This document shows, piece after piece, positions 45,206-55,620 of a DNA stretch of 64,000 nucleotides (its first letter is position 1; each line of letters begins with the position of its first letter). The notes under the pieces were generated by a model that made no database searches, had not been told where the DNA came from, and saw nothing but the letters and a program-made list of their open reading frames with translations. Position numbers and translations under genes: made by a program. Source of the stretch: Trichoplax adhaerens (taxonomy: Eukaryota > Animalia > Placozoa); contig NW_002060944.1 in NCBI RefSeq assembly GCF_000150275.1, positions 9,450,556-9,514,555 on the forward strand, in the 5' to 3' direction.

Positions 45206-45653
45206 TTAGTCGATGTTGATTTCGTATCCTGCCGGTAGCGTTCCCCATCTTGGGTTTCTAGGGCTAAATTCTATTAGCATAGAATAGATAACATCATCAG
45301 TGAGTTGGACCATAACGAGTTCAAGTAAATACTCTGTTATAAAAGATTGAGTACCATCTCCTATCAATAAGGTAAACTATTGCTAGCAAATTGGTGGGTA
45401 GCTTACGTTTCTCTTTGTATGCAGTGAGAGCTTCCATATAATCGACCATCTCTTGCCTACAATTTTTCTTTGCATTGACTCCTTGACGCCTGGTACATTC
45501 GCTCATACGCTCTCTTAAGACTCGGATCTCTTCTCGATCGATCCATCTATCTCTGACATACTGATTACGAGCTCTATACCAAGCTACCGGATCGCTTCTA
45601 TCGATTTCCTCGATACTCGGTACTCTCTTAAATTCTCTCTGAAATTTATCCAT
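45206..45653 (-). CDS. NDUFB10: NADH dehydrogenase (ubiquinone) 1 beta subcomplex subunit 10, short form
   Basis: REFKRVPSIEE..DP..RERMSECTRRQGVNAKKNCRQE (CX11C pattern of the PDSW family). Donor at 45406 (gtaagc). The last exon is probably 45270-45206; an alternative acceptor gives a stop at 45190. A non-coding first exon has its donor at 46031. A start at 45710 is also possible. Confidence 0.85.
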
Positions 45654-46016
45654 GCGACTATCCACTAATCGATAGCGGAGATTAATCTTTGGCAGAAAAA
45701 ATCTAGACATTGGAAATGAAAATGGATGAACATGAGCTATCTACGTAGCACAATGAAGGCGATGCCTAAAGGCTGGCTGTTTATAATTTTAAGGCAAAAT
45801 TCACATGATGGATAGTGAATATTGTGGCTAAGGAAGGAAGAAAATTTGGAACATGCTCAAACTCAACTACGACATCACTGCTAATGCAGGGATGAAAAAC
45901 ATCTTTACTTTATTTTTGTGGCTATCTAAAGTTGAATACGGTAGTGTAGATACTTTCGATTTAGATTATAGCTCTCATTCTTAGTAATAGATATCAATTT
46001 GGATGAAAATGGAGAT

Positions 46017-47200: not shown

Positions 47201-49151
47201 ATGGCCTTCGCTTGGATTTCAAGAGCAAGGAATATTTTATATCGCCGCCTACCTGTACCCATTTCCAAGAATACCAATTATGCTTTATGTTCAAGTACTG
47301 ATCGCCCTTCCGATGGAAAGCAAAAGGAGAGTCATCGAAATACCAAGCGGGCAACCCCAATGGACAAAGATGATGCAGATGTACCTCGATTTAATGATCC
47401 CACTGTCCAGCAAATTTTATCGAAAATAACTGGTGTAGATTTAGTCAAGATTTTTCATAGTAGACCTCAAGAACAACCCAAGTTACCTACTTATAAGCTA
47501 ATGTCAGATGTAGAGTTTAAAGCGGTGCGTGCAAGAGGATACAACTTGAATCAAACAAATACAACTTTTAAAATTTTCATTGATAATTTCCTAACTACTT
47601 TGGATGACAGTTTACAATGACTAACGTAGCTTCAATCTTTCAACCATTAGGCGGAAGCAAAAGCAATTCAAGAAGCCAAACAATTATTGGCTATGCCACC
47701 TCAGATGGTTCAAAGAGAACGAGGCATTAGCAGAGTAATCACCATTGATAAGGAGTTTGTAGGCTACGATGAAGATAATGCCAATTACATATTTACTGAT
47801 ATTAGCTTATCTGCAACTGATCGGGTTAGTGGATTAGAATTTACCCAAATGATACCATTATACAGTATACGTATTTCCGACTGATTTCTACTACTACTAC
47901 TACTACTACTACTGTAATCTCGACTTGATTGATGCATTGCAGCTACCGGCCTGTAGTTCAAATAGGTAATAGCTACGTGCATTATTCTTTCAGGATCGTC
48001 GTGTTGTTGTACGGGAACCAAATGGCGCCTTGAGATATGCTACCTGGGACGAAAGAGATAAAATGAACCAAATTTATTACCCCAAGTTAGGCAGACAGTT
48101 GAAAGTGCCTCTTATGTTTCAAGGAAAAAATTTAGAAGTACTCAATTTATGCTAAAGTTAACATACATACACTAGATCACGCTAGCATGTAATCCATACC
48201 ATGGTGCTATGGTGGCATTTGATTTGATAGGTGTAGGTCTTAAGATTGAAAAGATCGTTCAATGTTTTTGAAATAATAATTCTATTTTAGAATAGCTTCA
48301 GCCAATTACGTCATGCTGATCTCCTCGATTTAGCCGTACTTCAGTTTGAGCCTGATTCTTCTATGTATATCCAGGTAAACGCGATTTTTTTATCTTGAAA
48401 TGGGATTGTAGACCAACTCATTTTTATCGTGATCGCCAGTAGCTCTAAATTTTCTCATATGCATTTTAGGTTCATCAAAAAACTTATGAAAATCTAGATG
48501 ATCATAAAAATTATGACCTACTACGATCTACCCGTCATTTTGGCGGAATGGCGTATCATCTTGTTAAGAGGAATCGTTTCCATGGGTTACTCTCTGATAT
48601 GCTTACGCGAAAATTGTATGCACATGTTGAAATTGGCATTTTCCAGTGAACAATTTGTGCTTGTTTACTTTTTTTTGACCAGTAGTAATCCTTTCGTAGT
48701 AATTGCCTCTTTATGCTATCCTAGTAGCAGGAATATTGAACTATCCAATTCTTGCTAATTTATTCTAATTCCTTGATGGTACACAAAATGTAGGATATCG
48801 GATGCTTGCGATTTAATAGGCCTATATTGTTTATTGCATCCTCAAAGTTCTCTTGCCAGACAGATAAAAGAAGGCAATATGACCAAGTCACAAGCACTAA
48901 AGGTTTGTCTTTACATTGGATTAGTTTATGAGCGATAGCTTGGTTAGCAAGTTGAACTATGCTTCAATGATGATCCATTGCTAACTGTATCGCTCTGTCT
49001 TACTTTATTTCCTAATTGATCTAATTAGACTTATGTTCAAGCCAATGAAGACCTTGCTAGCCAATATAATATCGATCGATTATTGGATAAAGATGAAGAG
49101 TTCGCTAAGGAAGAAAGTTCGATGAAATATAGAAGTGGCGTCAGAAACTAA
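47201..49151 (+). CDS. MRPS22: Mitochondrial small ribosomal subunit protein mS22, 7 exons
   Basis: Approximate exons 47201-47524, 47651-47824, 47994-48137, 48291-48373, 48470-48615, 48794-48902 and 49030-49151. Motifs VQQILSKITGVDL.KIF, PTYKLMSD, YIFTDIS, VVVREPNGALRYATWDERDKMNQIYYP and YDLLRSTRHFGGM. Basic N-terminal presequence. Confidence 0.93.
47888..47913. repeat. (CTA)n microsatellite in MRPS22 intron 2
   Basis: About 8 copies of cta. Confidence 0.9.
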
Positions 49152-49841: not shown

Positions 49842-50535
49842 TTATAGCTGGGTACGGTAGGATGGTGTAGTTATCGAATCCTATAGTTCACCTAGACTAG
49901 TTATCTAATGATAGAGTTAACCTAGACAGTATCCTTTTGCAATTTCAATCCAAATTATAGCAGGGTTAGGTGGGATGGTCTAATCATCCAGTTAACCTAG
50001 ACAGTGTCCCTTTGCAATTTCAATCCAAATTATAGCTGGGTACGGTAGGATGGTGTAGTTATCGAATCCTATAGTTCACCTAGACTAGTTATCTAATGAT
50101 AGAGTTAACCTAGACAGTATCCTTTTGCAATTTCAATCCAAATTATAGCAGGGTTAGGTGGGATGGTCTAATCATCCAGTTAACCTAGACAGTGTCCCTT
50201 TGCAATTTCAATCCAAATTATAGCTGGGTACGGTAGGATGGTGTAGTTATCGAATCCTACAGTTCACCTAGACTAGTTATCTAATGATAGAGTTAACCTA
50301 GACAGTATCCTTTTGCAGTTTCAATCCAAATTATAGCAGGGTTAGGTAGGATGGTCGAGTCATCTAATCATACCGTCGAGTTAACCTAGACAGTGTCCCT
50401 TTGCCATTTCAATCCAAATCATTAGAGTTAGGTAGGATGGTCTAGTCATCGAATCATACAGTTAACTTAGACAGTGTCCCCTTGCAATTTGAATCCAAAC
50501 TACAGCAGGGTAAGGTAGAGGATGGTCTAGTTATT
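49842..50535. repeat. Higher-order tandem repeat: 188-bp unit made of related 75-bp and 113-bp monomers, about 3.7 units
   Basis: tagctgggtacggtaggatgg at 49845, 50033 and 50221 (period 188); gttaacctagacagt at 49916, 49991, 50104 and onward (alternating 75/113); decays toward the right. Confidence 0.95.
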
Positions 50536-50869: not shown

Positions 50870-51013
50870 TTGACCCTGGTTGGTTTTACCCTGGTTGGTT
50901 TGACCATGGTTGGTTTAACCCTGGTTGGTTTAACCCTGGTTGGTTTAACCCTGGTTGGTTTGACCATGGTTGGTTTAACCCTGGTTGGTTTAACCCTGGT
51001 TGGTTTTACCCTG
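50870..51013. repeat. 15-bp minisatellite (TTAACCCTGGTTGGT and variants), about 9.5 copies
   Basis: Direct reading; variant units carry tgaccatggt and ttaccctggt. Confidence 0.95.
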
Positions 51014-51352
51014 ATTTCACCATTTGGTGAAGCACTTTACGTAGTACTGTATTGTACTGTACTGTACAGTATCGGCATCCGATGTTCCAATACCATCTTG
51101 CCCGCCTTAAAAATCCCATCGACGATACGGTACGGTACGGTACGGTACGATACGGTACGGTACAGCGATACCGTATCCACTTGCAGTACTTTCACACCAG
51201 CTATACCAATGTGTCGGGCAATCAGTGCAAGCAATTTCGTCGTCAGCTTGAAATAGTCAAAGCCAAAAGGAAGGCCAACCCAAGGCTGCATCGAAGCATC
51301 TTACTACTTGTAGAGCTTGCTGTAGACATCGACATCGATTGAGGAAATCGCA

Positions 51353-54300
51353 ATGAGTGAGGTAAGCAACAGATCGACAGGTATCATCCATTCAACCATA
51401 TTTAAGAATGAAATGGGCTGGGGGTAGTTATGAAATCATGTGTAGACTGCTCTTCGCTCAATACTGTAACTTGACAATCGATAGCGTCGTCTTGGGTCTA
51501 CTCGTTATCATCTTGGGATTAATCATGCATGGAATGGATCAATTGGCTTGTTAGGGCTGAGGATGCTTGCTATGCCAGGCGATTCTTCCGCTTATCCATT
51601 GCCAAGTTACGACAGTTTGATACACTGTGTTGGTCCATAGATAGCTTGGAGAAGGCGTCATTGAACCCCATGGCGATAGATCTTTTCCGCATCGATCCAC
51701 AACGATCGTGACTAGCGTATTTCAGTCGAAAACACCATCAGGACATCATCGATCACTAACCTCCAATCAACTCCATGATAGAGAGTTGTTTCTACACTTT
51801 TATAGTTGATAGCTTGTTAATTGCAACATCTCTTTTTAAAGCAAGCAAGAAATGGCAGATTAAAACTAGACTCAAATACTTGTTCAGTCAAGTTTGCACA
51901 ATTCAATGTACTGTCTACAAGTCCTTTCAAATTGAAATAATTAATCCAATATTAGTACGCTAAAATTCGGGCGTTAATGAAGTAGTAGAATACCAACATG
52001 ATAAGGATGAATACAACGATCTCGCAATGCTATGAAAGTAATCCTTTTCATCATTTATTAATAGTATTGAAACTGATAGCAATACATCTGCTTGCAGAAT
52101 TCAATGTTGTGATCGGTTGCATAGTATCTAGCCGGTAATGATCGGGGGCAGAATACATAAACTGCACGTTAATTAGGACGGCGATAAAAGATATCCGATA
52201 CGTACAACTGATGGCATGACTATTTATTCAATCAAGTATTAATGCCTCTTTTCTGGCAACACAATATCGTTCAATCTGCAAAGAGTTCTCTTACTTTGGC
52301 TTATTTCTGTGAAAAGATGCCTTGAGTAATCATCACAAGCAAAGCTTCATTATGAAATTTCTGACTCGCAACTCCATTAAATGAATTGGTGGTAGCCAAC
52401 TACGAGTATAAATGGACATAATACACATGTACATCAATGATGCGCGTATAGTAACATACCATCTTAATGAATTAGCCGTCAAAGCTGCGATCATGGACGA
52501 CCAATGAGAAAAATTGTCTATAACTGCATACCTTTCCAACGTATACACACTGTTGATTAATGCTAACGCTTGCCAAATTGATTGGTAGAATCCTTTGTCA
52601 CTGATATACAATAAAACAAAAGTCAGAGTTACCGAGGGCTTCTGGTGTTGAAGACACTAATAATAATAATTAATTAAATTCCATTAGGACCCTAGTGTAT
52701 TGAGAAGACGAATTATACCACAAATAGTCTGTAATATCCTAGTGTAGCTCTAATTACAGCCTTATCAAGTTTGAACTGCAGCAGTGTAAAAGATGAATTG
52801 TAGTACATGCATCATGCGACAGAAACTCTTTCGTCCGCTTACCATTTGACTTTGAGAACGTACAGTATGCACGTATGTACAATATAAATCTAATCAATTA
52901 TTTTTGGTTTGCTTATTTAATTTAGTTTCCGGTAGAAAGTATCCTAACAAACGATCAGATTAAAAGTAAGTATAATATTTAGACGTTCTTCTTCATAATT
53001 AATACCGCGTATTGCCTGCTACATTAGTATGTTTAATTGATGATATTGTTGTCGCTTCCTTCAAATACGGACGTAATTCAGATTTTGTAATTCGCAATGC
53101 TGGGCTTTTTACTGGCAAAGCTAGATTAGTGTCTATAGTACTGGTAGTAAACAGAAGGCGAATAGTTTTGTAATACTTTGAATATAAAATGGTTAATAAT
53201 TATAGGATCATTTCTTTGATATTAGCAGTCAAGATGATCGTTCAATTTTGCAATCATTTCTTATTCACTTACTGAACGTAAATTAGGATACAAAATAGTT
53301 TCCTAATGATCCTATTACTATTGCAGCAGTACTTTTTAGAGGAACTTTCTTTCTGCTGAGATAATTTCTGTCTTTATTATAAGTCATAAATGTTTCGCTA
53401 AATGGTCTCAGTAACATCGTAAACGCGATCATGTTGTGCTTTCAATTCCATAAGAATACATGAATACCCTGAAATGTATAAACGAAATGTGATATCGACT
53501 AGACACTAATTAGTATTCTCCAGGCAATCATATCTTATTGTACATCAATTAAATTTAGATCTGCACATTGCCTTCGATAAGCGAGATGAAGGCAAAAAAG
53601 GTGCCGTTCCTCCGGAAAAAATTACGGATTTAATCAAGGAAGTTTTTGGCCCACCTCTAAATGGCACTTTAATTGGTTATGCGAAGGACCTAAGCAAAAA
53701 CCTTTCTGAAAATGGTCAAGAGATTTTAAAATATTTAGCGCTTGTTTTACAACTAAATTATTAAACAGTGTCAAGTTAAGTCAAGCACAGAATCAATAGG
53801 AATTAAAATTTACTTCTTCTTTCCATTAGGTGGTTTATCGTATGAAAATTTTATAGTGGTTGTGAAACATTTAATGTTTGAGACAACGCGCTGGGGAGTC
53901 CTAAAGACGGCACCTGAAAGGCCTATTGGACTGGATAGTATTCAGGATCAAGTCAAGCAGAAATTGCTTCGTTTTGGATTAACATTCAATATTATGATAG
54001 TAGGTCGGTATCTTTTCCTTCTGAATAAATTGTGCAATGTAGATTGACTGGTATGATCGGATCTTTGTTTCTAGGTTCTTCTGGCTTGGGTAAATCCACT
54101 ATGATGAACACATTGTTCAAGAGCAAAGTGAATCGATGGATGGCATCAGATACTAGTCAAGAGCCAATAATTCCGCCAACTGTAGAAATTAAGACTATTT
54201 CTCACGGTAGTTTTTCATAGTATCCATAGCTGTTGATAGGATACTTGATGCTCAGTTGTATAATTCTACTTCTTAATAGTAATTGAAGAGAAGAACATTC

Positions 54301-55620
54301 GTCTAAAACTAAGCATAACGGATACTCCAGGTTTTGGAGATCACGTTAACAATGTTAAATGGTAAGACATCTATATAGGCTTTTAAAGTAATTTACAGAA
54401 GTCTTTATCACTTAATAGTAATCTATTTACGAACTTTACGTCCATAGCTGGGAGCCGATTATAAAGTACATTAATGATCAGTATCAGCATTACCTAAGTG
54501 AAGAGAGACGTATTGAACGTAAACCTCGAATTCCAGACACAAGAATTCACTGTGTAATCTATTTTATTGCTCCAACTGGACATAGGTATACAATATTACG
54601 TTGTAAGCGTAGAACATAGTTGAGATACAACAATAAATAATCTGACAGCAATATTTGCTATGTACCAAAATTTCAGCCTTAGAGCTATTGATGTTGAATG
54701 TTTAAAGCGATTGGTAAAAGTTGTAAACGTGATTCCAGTTATCGCTAAAGCCGATAGCTTGACCTTGGAAGAAAGACAGGCGTTTAAAAATAGGGTTTGT
54801 ATCACTATGTGCAATCATGAAGAAGTTGGTAAAAAGTCTCATCCAGTGTAGAGTACAAATCGGATAACCTATGCTGGTGTTATCATCTAATATAGATTCG
54901 TAATGACTTTGAGAGAAATGGCATTTCTAAACTGTATCCAATGCTTCATAAAGGCCTTGAAGAAGATGAATTCCAGAAAAATAAGGCCATTAAGGTATAA
55001 TTTTGCTAAATTCAGTGTTTAATCAAGTCAATATGGAAGGATTTTCATGTTACTTTTTTCTTCGTTAGTTGGAATCCAATTTGCGTTTGCATTGTAATCA
55101 TTCTTTTTTATACCATAGAATCAACTACCATTTGCTGTGGTTGGTAGTGATCAATTTATGTCCATTAAAGGAACACCAGTCTTAGCTAGGAAAACTAGAT
55201 GGGGCACTATTGAAGGTAACAATGTCATCAGTTACTGGTATGGATTAACTATAGAGGATTAATGAGATCTGATTCGAGTGCTTTTGGTTCATTTCTCTTA
55301 CAGTTGAAAATCCAAGTCATAATGAATTTCCTCAATTTCGTGATATGCTTCTCAGGTATTGCTAACGTATTATAATGTCAATATTTGAGGATAATGCTCT
55401 ACTATTTCCATTACAATCTACTGATCAAACGTTATTTTAAGGCGTAGTGGGATGGCAAAATTGTCATCATTTACTTACTAATTATAACTACTATTAATAA
55501 AAACTTTTGGTTTATTTTGATAGGACTCACTTACATGATTTGATAGATACAACTGCTGAAGTTTACTATGAGCATTATCGTCGCAATCAACTTCAACTTG
55601 TGCAAGACGGTGATTCCTAG
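51353..55620 (+). CDS. Septin of the SEPT3/9/12 type (no C-terminal coiled coil) with an N-terminal EF-hand-like extension
   Basis: Approximate exons 51353-51361, 52926-52965, 53559-53714, 53830-54003, 54075-54207, 54280-54361, 54448-54586, 54677-54793, 54896-54993, 55119-55215, 55304-55355 and 55524-55620. Motifs FNIMIVGSSGLGKST, DTPGFGD, PDTRIHCVIYFI, VIAKADSLT, LPFAVVGS, RKTRWGTIEVENPSHNEF and YYEHYRR, then a stop after about 10 residues. Confidence 0.95.

What the first reader, a model, noticed from the sequence alone, without database searches (positions are those of the whole stretch)
51353..53900. Septin fused to an N-terminal calmodulin/myosin-light-chain-like EF-hand pair
Seen: exons 51353-51361, 52926-52965, 53559-53714 and 53830 onward join with canonical GT-AG sites and matching phases (0,1,1). 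The product is MSEFPVESILTNDQIKNLHIAFDKRDEGKKGAVPPEKITDLIKEVFGPPLNGTLIGYAKDLSKNLSENGGLSYENFIVVVKHL, running directly into the septin domain. Knowledge: this lines up with the calmodulin N-lobe pattern (LTEEQIAEFKEAF..FDKDGDGTI...EL..VMRSLG ... GNGTIDFPEFLTMM), whereas septin N-termini are normally low-complexity or disordered. The loops lack most acidic ligands (position 12 is K and N), as in non-Ca-binding light chains. Inference: a septin with a built-in pseudo-EF-hand lobe could dock on IQ motifs (myosin, IQGAP) or dimerise, linking septin filament ends to actomyosin. I know of no described EF-hand-septin fusion but could not search.
Basis: partly seen in the sequence, partly recalled or inferred. 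Interest (0 to 1): 0.82.

Follow-up and report, generated by a model that had tools for sequence, protein, structure and literature searches.

The report
Septin with built-in EF-hand domain
A Trichoplax septin of the SEPT3/9/12 type carries a folded, calmodulin-like but probably calcium-blind EF-hand domain at its N-terminus; the public gene model misses this domain, yet it is shared with sponges, corals, echinoderms and amphioxus, which suggests an ancient animal feature that was not found in the vertebrate and tunicate proteins retrieved.

Summary
The four exons, their GT-AG sites and phases (0,1,1) are in the sequence as described.

**Gene model.**
- A genomic contig of a second, divergent placozoan-like organism (L002) keeps exons 1-4 at the same lengths and splice sites.
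- Its exons are 75-87% identical to the window; its introns cannot be aligned.
- Substitutions fall mainly on third codon positions. dN/dS is 0.08 for exon 3 and 0.03 for the part of exon 4 upstream of the annotated ATG.
- The sponge Oscarella orthologue has the same four intron positions and phases, including a three-codon first exon.

**Annotation.** The public Trichoplax model TRIADDRAFT_21019 (314 aa) starts at ATG 53874 and lacks these 83 residues.

**Distribution.** The N-domain is homologous to the N-terminus of about 400-aa "neuronal-specific septin-3-like" proteins of Porifera, Cnidaria, Echinodermata, Hemichordata and Cephalochordata. None of the vertebrate or tunicate proteins I fetched has it.

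**Fold.**
- Pfam EF-hand_7 matches six of eight orthologues over its full length, but below threshold.
- phmmer against PDB returns only EF-hand proteins.
- An AlphaFold model superposes on the calmodulin N-lobe (TM 0.79-0.86).
- Both loops lack canonical Ca2+ ligands.

Fold tests ran on orthologues, and the Trichoplax exons were tested one by one. The fusion is real and ancient, and I found no description of it in the papers searched. Its function is inferred, not shown.

The parts
51353..51361 (+). Coding part of exon 1 (M-S-E), donor gtaagc. The 5' UTR and transcription start upstream are not defined.
   Evidence: L002 has GCA ATG AAT GAG|gtataa as the best local match. Oscarella exon 1 is also three codons, ATG GAG AGG|gtaagc.
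52926..52965 (+). Exon 2 (40 nt, ends in phase 1). Encodes the start of the first EF-hand helix, with the 'LT-x-x-Q' motif.
   Evidence: L002 1334-1373 has the same length, AG/GTAAGT sites and phase, with dN/dS 0.21. The Oscarella intron is at the same position and phase.
53559..53714 (+). Exon 3 (156 nt, phase 1 to 1). Encodes the end of helix 1, pseudo-loop 1, helices 2 and 3, and the first half of loop 2.
   Evidence: GC 0.41. L002 1564-1719 is ungapped and 75% identical at nt level and 76% at aa level, with codon-position differences 10/4/24 and dN/dS 0.08. It matches positions 19-52 of the N-domain HMM, E 1.6e-5. It is 52% identical over 27 aa to Oscarella, E 5e-8. It is unique in the genome.
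53830..54003 (+). Exon 4. Encodes the end of loop 2, the last EF-hand helix, the conserved TT-x-WG-x-LKT linker, the septin alpha0 / polybasic helix and the first strand of the G domain. The publicly annotated start ATG lies inside it at 53874.
   Evidence: The 44 nt upstream of the ATG are 86% identical to L002, and conservation drops sharply at the AG; codon-position differences are 0/1/5. It matches HMM positions 72-97, E 1.2e-8. It is 49% identical over 57 aa to Oscarella, E 2e-17.
54075..54206 (+). Exon 5: P-loop (GSSGLGKST) and G1 region of the septin domain.
   Evidence: Identical to P0270.
54280..54361 (+). Exon 6: the G3 DTPGFGD region.
54448..54585 (+). Exon 7 of the septin domain.
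54677..54794 (+). Exon 8: the G4 AKAD region.
54896..54994 (+). Exon 9.
55119..55215 (+). Exon 10: septin unique element.
55304..55355 (+). Exon 11.
55524..55620 (+). Exon 12 with stop TAG at 55618-55620. No C-terminal coiled coil. The full model is 397 aa: 83 N-terminal plus the 314 already annotated.

Best explanation
**Shown.** The locus is Trichoplax adhaerens gene TRIADDRAFT_21019, a Group 1A (SEPT3/SEPT9/SEPT12/Cdc10-type) septin without a coiled coil. Its real coding region starts about 2.5 kb upstream of the annotated ATG. Three small extra exons, plus the first 44 nt of the annotated first exon, add 83 residues. They form helix-loop-helix twice over, an EF-hand pair of the calmodulin N-lobe type, followed by a conserved TT-x-WG-x-LKT linker that runs straight into the septin alpha0 helix. 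The same architecture, with the same intron positions, occurs in a sponge. The same domain occurs in cnidarians, echinoderms, a hemichordate and amphioxus. This suggests it dates to the stem of animals and was later lost, or replaced by a disordered N-terminal extension, in vertebrates and tunicates.

**Inferred.**
- Neither loop keeps the canonical Ca2+ ligand set. Loop 1 has Lys (other phyla: a hydrophobic residue) at position 12. Loop 2 has Asn, Asp or Glu at position 12, but ligand positions 1 and 3 are mostly missing.
- The domain therefore most likely works as a permanent, cation-independent helix-binding module, like an apo-calmodulin lobe or a myosin essential light chain, and not as a Ca2+ switch.
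- Group 1A septins form the central pair of the septin octamer and meet through their NC interface (Delic et al. 2024, PMC11238149). Two such lobes would then sit side by side at the centre of the rod.
- There they could pair with each other, clamp the adjacent amphipathic alpha0 / polybasic helix, or recruit a partner helix such as an IQ-like motif.
- A shorter isoform starting at ATG 53874 may also be made.
For: **Gene model**
- Splice sites, phases and peptide.
- Exon/intron GC contrast.
- L002 orthologue with identical exon lengths and sites, and unalignable introns.
- dN/dS 0.03-0.21 in the N-terminal exons, against 0.01-0.15 in the septin exons.
- Exon 1 match.
- Oscarella intron positions and phases 0,1,1,1 and a three-codon exon 1.

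**Identity**
- P0270 = TRIADDRAFT_21019, 314 aa, starts at the 53874 ATG.
- Pfam Septin, E 1.6e-101.
- Best PDB relatives are SEPT3 (350 bits), SEPT9 (345), SEPT12 (321) and Cdc10 (288), against SEPT7 (252) and SEPT2 (245).

**Domain family**
- Seventeen fetched proteins carry the whole N-domain.
- The Trichoplax exons align to it in order.

**EF-hand fold**
- PF13499 covers about 1-67 of 67 positions, E 0.005-0.015, in 6 of 8 orthologues. On the isolated domain, EF-hand_1 scores 6e-4 and EF-hand_7 scores 1.7e-3.
- phmmer against PDB: the top 60 are all EF-hand proteins, with centrin at 9e-4.
- AlphaFold2: pLDDT 79, topology H-E-H-H-E-H.
- Foldseek top hits are the Mg2+-bound calmodulin N-lobe 3ucw (TM 0.79-0.86, rmsd 1.8-2.2 A), apo-CaM on myosin-X IQ motifs, centrin and troponin C.
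- The ESM Atlas model of the sponge orthologue has as neighbours troponin C, CALML4 and a myosin regulatory light chain, TM 0.68-0.73.
- Exon 3 alone has only EF-hand-clan named neighbours in the Atlas.

**Loop residues**.
Against: - No transcript evidence for Trichoplax was available. The splicing rests on comparative genomics.
- The Trichoplax N-domain was never analysed as one chain. Single exons give no Pfam match and no PDB match.
- All Pfam EF-hand scores stay below the gathering thresholds (16-20 bits against 25-30).
- Placozoan loop 2 (N-L-S-E-N/D-G-G-L-S-x-E-N) has oxygen side chains at positions 1, 3, 5 and 12, so weak Ca2+ or Mg2+ binding is not excluded.
- The full-length AlphaFold model was poor (pLDDT 55) and says nothing about docking of the lobe.
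- The functional part is inference from fold and position only.
Confidence: 0.8

Rival explanations
1. The public annotation is right. The septin begins at ATG 53874, and the upstream pieces are untranslated 5' exons or chance open frames.
For: - TRIADDRAFT_21019 is annotated that way.
- The ATG gives an ordinary 34-residue septin N-terminus.
- RefSeq short isoforms in Saccoglossus, Ptychodera and Anneissia start at the equivalent point.
- Single exons give no Pfam hit.
Against: - The third-position substitution pattern and dN/dS of 0.03-0.21 upstream of the ATG show translation in this frame.
- Homology to the N-domain of orthologues: E 1.6e-5 to 2e-17.
- Intron positions and phases match a sponge orthologue.
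- A short isoform may still exist alongside the long one; I put that at about 0.3.
Confidence: 0.04
2. Exons 1-3 form a separate small EF-hand gene. It would end by reading through the exon 3 donor to the stop near 53763.
For: The exon 3 frame stays open for 16 codons past the donor, and the donor GTCAAG is weak.
Against: - The read-through tail is not conserved. L002 stops after 8 different codons, and the DNA there has indels.
- The spliced continuation in exon 4 is conserved (13 of 14 residues identical). It supplies the missing last EF-hand helix and aligns with the orthologues.
- A word search for small proteins of 46-147 aa carrying exon 3 found nothing.
Confidence: 0.02
3. The domain is a working cation sensor. 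Loop 2 of the placozoan protein binds Ca2+ or Mg2+ and makes septin assembly or partner binding ion-dependent.
For: - Placozoan loop 2 has N/S/N(D) at positions 1, 3 and 5, Gly at 6, Leu at 8 and Asn at 12.
- The closest structures include Mg2+- and Mn2+-bound calmodulin N-lobes.
Against: - Position 12 is not the bidentate Glu in placozoans or cnidarians.
- Loop 1 has Lys or a hydrophobic residue at position 12 in every member.
- Ligand positions 1 and 3 of loop 2 are not conserved across phyla. A shared ion-sensing role would predict that they are.
Confidence: 0.14

Closest known systems
Group 1A septins (human SEPT3, SEPT9, SEPT12; yeast Cdc10)
   Same: The G domain is about 60-65% identical, and these are the best PDB and database matches. 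There is no C-terminal coiled coil. The alpha0 / polybasic helix precedes the P-loop. The expected place is the central pair of the octamer.
   Different: Vertebrate members have a short or long disordered N-terminal extension. In SEPT9 it binds microtubules and actin (general knowledge). Here, and in the non-vertebrate orthologues, the extension is a folded 80-residue EF-hand pair.
Calmodulin N-lobe, centrin, troponin C, myosin light chains (EF-hand pair, Pfam PF13499)
   Same: Helix-loop-helix twice, with a short beta bridge between the loops. Foldseek TM 0.79-0.86 and rmsd about 2 A to the calmodulin N-lobe. All phmmer PDB hits are of this family.
   Different: It is a single lobe fused to a GTPase. 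It scores below Pfam thresholds. Both loops lack the D-x-D-x-D-G...E ligand set, so it resembles non-binding light-chain lobes or apo-calmodulin.
Miro (mitochondrial Rho GTPase) with EF-hand and EF_assoc domains
   Same: It is another P-loop GTPase with built-in EF-hand pairs, some of them 'hidden' non-canonical ones. The Atlas feature search on the sponge N-domain lists Miro EF_assoc clusters among its neighbours (a weak lead).
   Different: In Miro the EF-hands lie between two GTPase domains and include Ca2+-binding loops. No homology beyond the fold is shown, and the GTPase family differs.
SAPC2 EF-hand-like N-terminal domain (PF25825)
   Same: It is a degenerate N-terminal EF-hand-like pair. 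It appears as a weak neighbour (E 0.16).
   Different: Scores are far below threshold, and there is no evidence of specific kinship.

Membership tests
Septin (Pfam PF00735) | Septin-type G domain above the Pfam gathering score, with the P-loop, DxxG and AKAD motifs | tested here: met
   P0270 scores E 1.6e-101, 339.7 bits against a cut-off of 26.2. GSSGLGKST, DTPGFGD and AKAD are read in exons 5, 6 and 8.
Group 1A septins (SEPT3/9/12, Cdc10) | Closest to SEPT3/9/12 rather than to the SEPT2, SEPT6 or SEPT7 groups | tested here: met
   PDB phmmer gives SEPT3 350 bits, SEPT9 345, SEPT12 321 and Cdc10 288, against SEPT7 252, SEPT2 245 and SEPT6 222. All top database hits are SEPT3- or SEPT9-like. 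No phylogenetic tree was built.
Group 1A septins (SEPT3/9/12, Cdc10) | No C-terminal coiled-coil extension | tested here: met
   The stop comes about 10 residues after the last conserved septin helix. The product ends at residue 314 of P0270.
Group 1A septins (SEPT3/9/12, Cdc10) | Occupies the central dimer of the hetero-octamer | not testable with these tools
   Known for the human and yeast members (Delic et al. 2024, PMC11238149). Only assumed here.
EF-hand pair (Pfam PF13499, EF-hand clan) | Score above the Pfam gathering threshold | tested here: not met
   Orthologues score 16-19 bits against a cut-off of 30, though over the whole profile and in 6 of 8 proteins. Single Trichoplax exons give no match.
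EF-hand pair (Pfam PF13499, EF-hand clan) | Two helix-loop-helix motifs paired through a short beta bridge; structural superposition on known EF-hand lobes | tested here: met
   Tested on orthologues. The AF2 topology is H8-21, E28-30, H31-42, H49-59, E64-66, H67-80 with pLDDT 79. Foldseek gives probability 1.00 and TM 0.79-0.86 to the calmodulin N-lobe. An independent Atlas model of the sponge protein agrees. Trichoplax exons 3 and 4 align in order to this family. The joined Trichoplax chain was not folded.
EF-hand pair (Pfam PF13499, EF-hand clan) | Canonical 12-residue Ca2+-binding loop (D-x-D/N-x-D/N-G-x-I-x-x-x-E) | tested here: not met
   Trichoplax loop 1 is D-E-G-K-K-G-A-V-P-P-E-K. Loop 2 is N-L-S-E-N-G-G-L-S-Y-E-N. 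No family member has Glu at position 12 of loop 1.
EF-hand pair (Pfam PF13499, EF-hand clan) | Ca2+ binding | not testable with these tools
   Needs ITC or 45Ca overlay on recombinant domain.

The most novel reading that the evidence does not exclude
The stem-animal Group 1A septin carried a calcium-blind EF-hand lobe. Two copies sit at the central NC interface of the octamer and clamp an amphipathic helix: either the neighbouring alpha0 / polybasic helix, or an IQ-like motif of a myosin or IQGAP-type partner. On this reading, septin polymerisation, membrane binding or actomyosin coupling was originally gated by a folded adaptor. Vertebrates later replaced that adaptor with the disordered SEPT9 N-terminal extension.
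Probability: 0.25. Interest if true: 0.8.

Novelty: new variant of a known kind. Interest (0 to 1): 0.62.

Why it matters
- Septin N-terminal extensions are generally treated as variable and disordered. The two evolutionary surveys I opened (Auxier 2019, Delic 2024) do not contain the term EF-hand in their text. The search tables also show zero EF-hand occurrences for the reviews PMC8801916 and PMC7851956 and the preprint PMC10690161.
- A folded EF-hand lobe shared by sponge, placozoan, cnidarian and invertebrate deuterostome SEPT3-type septins would change the picture of the ancestral animal septin rod.
- It would also give a concrete, testable handle on what the central subunit's N-terminus does.
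- It may explain why SEPT9-type N-termini are the main site of isoform and partner diversity.
- Practically, the Trichoplax model TRIADDRAFT_21019 is truncated by 83 residues, and Pfam does not flag the domain in any orthologue.

Tried and rejected
- **Pfam on exons 3 and 4 alone:** nothing.
- **phmmer of exon 3 against PDB:** only chance hits.
- **Own-genome search with exon 3:** single copy, no paralogue or retrocopy to use as a joined reference.
- **Word search for small proteins or fragments carrying exon 3:** none.
- **Big representative search with exon 7:** 1145 septins, but the Trichoplax protein is not a cluster representative. Its value was the 75-aa fragment that led to contig L002.
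- **Word search with alignment A2:** failed to list the Trichoplax protein. A local rebuild showed the profile scored the Trichoplax exons at only about 185 bits in total. Alignment A1 scored better in local tests and did recover it.
- **Nematostella locus:** not on record.
- **Full-length AlphaFold of the sponge orthologue with 18 sequences:** poor (pLDDT 55). It is uninformative on how the lobe packs, although the N-domain itself again folded at pLDDT 68-84.
- **Separate small gene:** rejected, because the read-through is not conserved.
- the exons were never joined in any tool or script. No Pfam, AlphaFold or Foldseek run exists for the Trichoplax N-domain as a single chain.
Full report
**What is in the sequence**

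The window is AT-rich, intron-bearing eukaryotic DNA. It lies on contig C1413 of a 105.6-Mb, 1414-contig assembly. A later search identified the gene as TRIADDRAFT_21019 of Trichoplax adhaerens.

- Exon 1, 51353-51361: ATG AGT GAG, followed by gtaagc.
- Exon 2, 52926-52965: preceded by ag, followed by gtaagt.
- Exon 3, 53559-53714: preceded by ag, followed by gtcaag.
- Exon 4: starts at 53830 after ag.

The frame of exon 4 is closed by a stop at 53754-56, and there is no ATG before 53874. Exons 2 and 3 contain no Met. So either translation begins at 53874, or all four pieces belong together. Downstream I traced eight further exons to the stop at 55618-20. The total is 397 codons, 314 of them from ATG 53874.

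**Is the N-terminal extension a real coding part of the septin gene?**

Composition gives a first hint. Exon 3 has GC 0.41, like the septin exons, while its flanking introns have 0.27-0.31. Intron 3 is 115 nt, the same size class as the septin introns. An 84-codon open frame alone is not rare in such DNA.

The decisive evidence is comparative.
- The representative search with exon 7 returned a 75-residue fragment, 89% identical. It is encoded on a 2.7-kb genomic Logan contig, SRR30664516 (L002).
- I could not identify the organism. By divergence (dS about 0.8-1.8) it is a different placozoan-like species.
- Aligned to the window, exons 2 to 7 are ungapped, of identical length, with AG and GT at the same positions. 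They are 75-87% identical. Every intron drops to about 50% with indels.
- Differences by codon position are 10/4/24 in exon 3 (dN/dS 0.08), 3/3/7 in exon 2 (0.21) and 0/1/5 in the 44 nt of exon 4 upstream of the annotated ATG (0.03). The undisputed septin exons give 0.01-0.15.
- The other two frames of exon 3 are full of stops in both species.
- The best local match of window 51250-51420 in the L002 upstream region falls exactly on exon 1: GCA ATG AGT GAG GTA against GCA ATG AAT GAG GTA.
- The frame that reads through the exon 3 donor is not conserved. That removes the idea of a separate small gene.

**A second, deeper line of evidence**

The Oscarella lobularis orthologue (P0271, 400 aa) was mapped onto its genomic locus L004. 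It shows:
- a three-codon first exon, ATG GAG AGG|gtaagc;
- a phase-1 intron between the 'LT-x-x-Q-x-x' helix start and 'AL-x-x-x-F';
- a phase-1 intron just before 'GLSF';
- a phase-1 intron in the Gly before the P-loop.

These are the same four positions and phases as in the Trichoplax model. Shared intron positions and phases between a sponge and a placozoan argue that the whole 5' structure is ancient and orthologous.

**What the public annotation says**

TRIADDRAFT_21019 (P0270) is 314 aa and begins MFETTRWG, that is, at ATG 53874. The search profile contained the exon 3 rows, yet no placozoan protein carrying the N-domain was listed. So in that collection the placozoan N-domain is unannotated.

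**What the extension is**

I therefore looked for database proteins that carry a homologous region.
- Exon 4, including its part upstream of the ATG, and exon 3 both match the N-termini of about 400-aa 'neuronal-specific septin-3-like' proteins.
- I built an HMM from nine of these N-termini. It finds the full domain in 17 of the 325 proteins fetched:
  - the sponge Oscarella;
  - the anthozoans Actinia, Nematostella, Exaiptasia, Acropora, Pocillopora, Paramuricea and Actinostola;
  - the brittle star Amphiura and an unnamed NCBI protein;
  - the acorn worm Glandiceps;
  - amphioxus;
  - two unnamed transcript contigs.
- It finds the domain in none of the vertebrate or tunicate SEPT3/9/12 proteins fetched.
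- Scored one by one, Trichoplax exon 3 aligns to HMM positions 19-52 (E 1.6e-5) and exon 4 to positions 72-97 (E 1.2e-8). The L002 exons behave likewise.
- BLASTP of exon 3 and exon 4 against the sponge protein gives 5e-8 and 2e-17. A motif G-x-VPP-x-x-I-x-DLI-x-x-VFGP is shared by sponge and placozoan.

**Is the family an EF-hand pair?**
- Pfam EF-hand_7 matches six of eight orthologues over practically its whole length. E-values are 0.005-0.015, which is 16-18 bits against a cut-off of 30.
- On the isolated domain of P0185 (referenced from a transcript contig, L003:119-397), EF-hand_1, EF-hand_7 and EF-hand_6 score 6e-4 to 3e-3.
- phmmer of that domain against all PDB sequences returns 151 sequences. 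The 60 shown are all EF-hand proteins: centrin 9e-4, CaBP4, myosin regulatory light chain and calmodulin. The alignments span a whole lobe.
- AlphaFold2 with a 15-row alignment gives pLDDT 79 and pTM 0.70. The order is helix, short strand, helix, helix, short strand, helix.
- The top Foldseek hits against PDB are all EF-hand proteins (apart from one calmodulin-containing engineered sensor). They are led by the Mg2+-bound calmodulin N-lobe 3ucw (TM 0.79-0.86 on the target, rmsd 1.8-2.2 A), apo-calmodulin on myosin-X IQ motifs, centrin and troponin C.
- The ESM Atlas's own model of the sponge protein has troponin C, calmodulin-like 4 and a myosin regulatory light chain as structural neighbours of residues 1-100.
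- Even Trichoplax exon 3 alone has only EF-hand-clan families among its named feature neighbours (weak evidence on its own).

I conclude that the domain has the EF-hand-pair fold and is very probably a divergent member of that superfamily. It fails the Pfam threshold.

**Loops**

Using the centrin alignment as the register, Trichoplax loop 1 reads D-E-G-K-K-G-A-V-P-P-E-K and loop 2 reads N-L-S-E-N-G-G-L-S-Y-E-N (L002 has D at position 5).
- Across the family, position 1 of loop 1 is always D and position 6 is nearly always G (one unnamed protein has E). Position 12 is never E.
- In loop 2, position 12 is N, D or E, while positions 1 and 3 vary freely.

So this is a pseudo-EF-hand pair. Weak cation binding by the placozoan loop 2 cannot be excluded.

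**Septin part and likely mechanism**

The G domain is a clear Group 1A septin and has no coiled coil. PDB scores are SEPT3 350 bits, SEPT9 345, SEPT12 321 and Cdc10 288, against 252 or less for the other groups. Group 1A subunits form the central dimer of the octamer (Delic et al. 2024, PMC11238149).

The EF-hand lobe is joined to the alpha0 helix by about 20 residues containing the invariant TT-x-WG-x-LKT motif.

My inference, not shown, is as follows. Two calcium-blind lobes sit at the central NC interface. There they act as helix-binding adaptors: towards each other, towards alpha0, or towards an outside partner. The best structural matches being closed or apo-like calmodulin lobes fits that weakly. 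The full-length AlphaFold run was too poor to test it.

RefSeq short isoforms of hemichordate and crinoid orthologues start right after the domain, at the point of the Trichoplax ATG 53874. A short isoform may therefore coexist with the long one.

**Novelty**

Four full-text searches, and the term look-ups in Auxier 2019 and Delic 2024, turned up no description of an EF-hand domain in a septin. In septin papers the term refers to STIM/Orai or Miro.

The architecture does exist in public protein models of several phyla, without a Pfam flag. I could not check InterPro structural assignments. I therefore rate it a new variant of a known kind. It is real, ancient and apparently undescribed, but it is a domain-architecture finding with an inferred function.

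**Constraints observed**
- Nothing in the window looked human.
- No step needed referral.

Noticed in passing
window 53874-55620 (+): The public model TRIADDRAFT_21019 (314 aa) starts at the internal ATG 53874 and so lacks 83 conserved N-terminal residues. No placozoan protein with the N-domain appeared in the protein collection searched.
   Followed up: yes
window 53886-53912 (exon 4), and the orthologues: An invariant TT-x-WG-x-LKT motif lies between the EF-hand lobe and the septin alpha0 helix. It is conserved from sponge to amphioxus. It had low pLDDT in both models. Its role is unknown.
   Followed up: partly
P0163, P0171, P0173, P0170 (crinoid, hemichordate and sea-star RefSeq isoforms): Short isoforms begin just after, or inside, the last helix of the EF-hand domain. 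This suggests alternative promoters give septin-3-like proteins with and without the lobe.
   Followed up: partly
window 50000-50472, 50873-51013, 51122-51163: Three tandem arrays lie directly upstream of exon 1, inside the GC-richer (0.42-0.52) putative promoter region: a 188-bp unit x2.4, a 15-bp unit ACCCTGGTTGGTTTA x9.4, and ACGGT x8.4.
   Followed up: no
window 45324-45710 (-) and 47201-47617 (+): The neighbouring open frames match NDUFB10 (Pfam E 1.3e-17) and mitochondrial ribosomal protein S22 (E 6.5e-12). They are ordinary housekeeping neighbours. The intergenic gap to the septin gene is about 3 kb and full of repeats.
   Followed up: partly
G000: C1404:2085102-2086812, C1411:5053448-5054757, C1410:3422425-3423334: The genome holds three further septin loci, four in all. 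The C1404 locus has an unusually long open exon (331 aa).
   Followed up: no
L002 (Logan SRR30664516 contig 67113): This is a genomic contig of an unidentified organism whose septin exons are 75-87% identical to Trichoplax, with unalignable introns. It is presumably another placozoan lineage. Intron 2 is about 190 nt there, against 593 nt in the window.
   Followed up: partly
PDB entries 9bht and 9bhw: Solved Ciona septin complexes include a 364-aa septin-3 chain. The Ciona septin-3 fetched here (P0156) has no N-domain, so these structures show the domain-less state.
   Followed up: no
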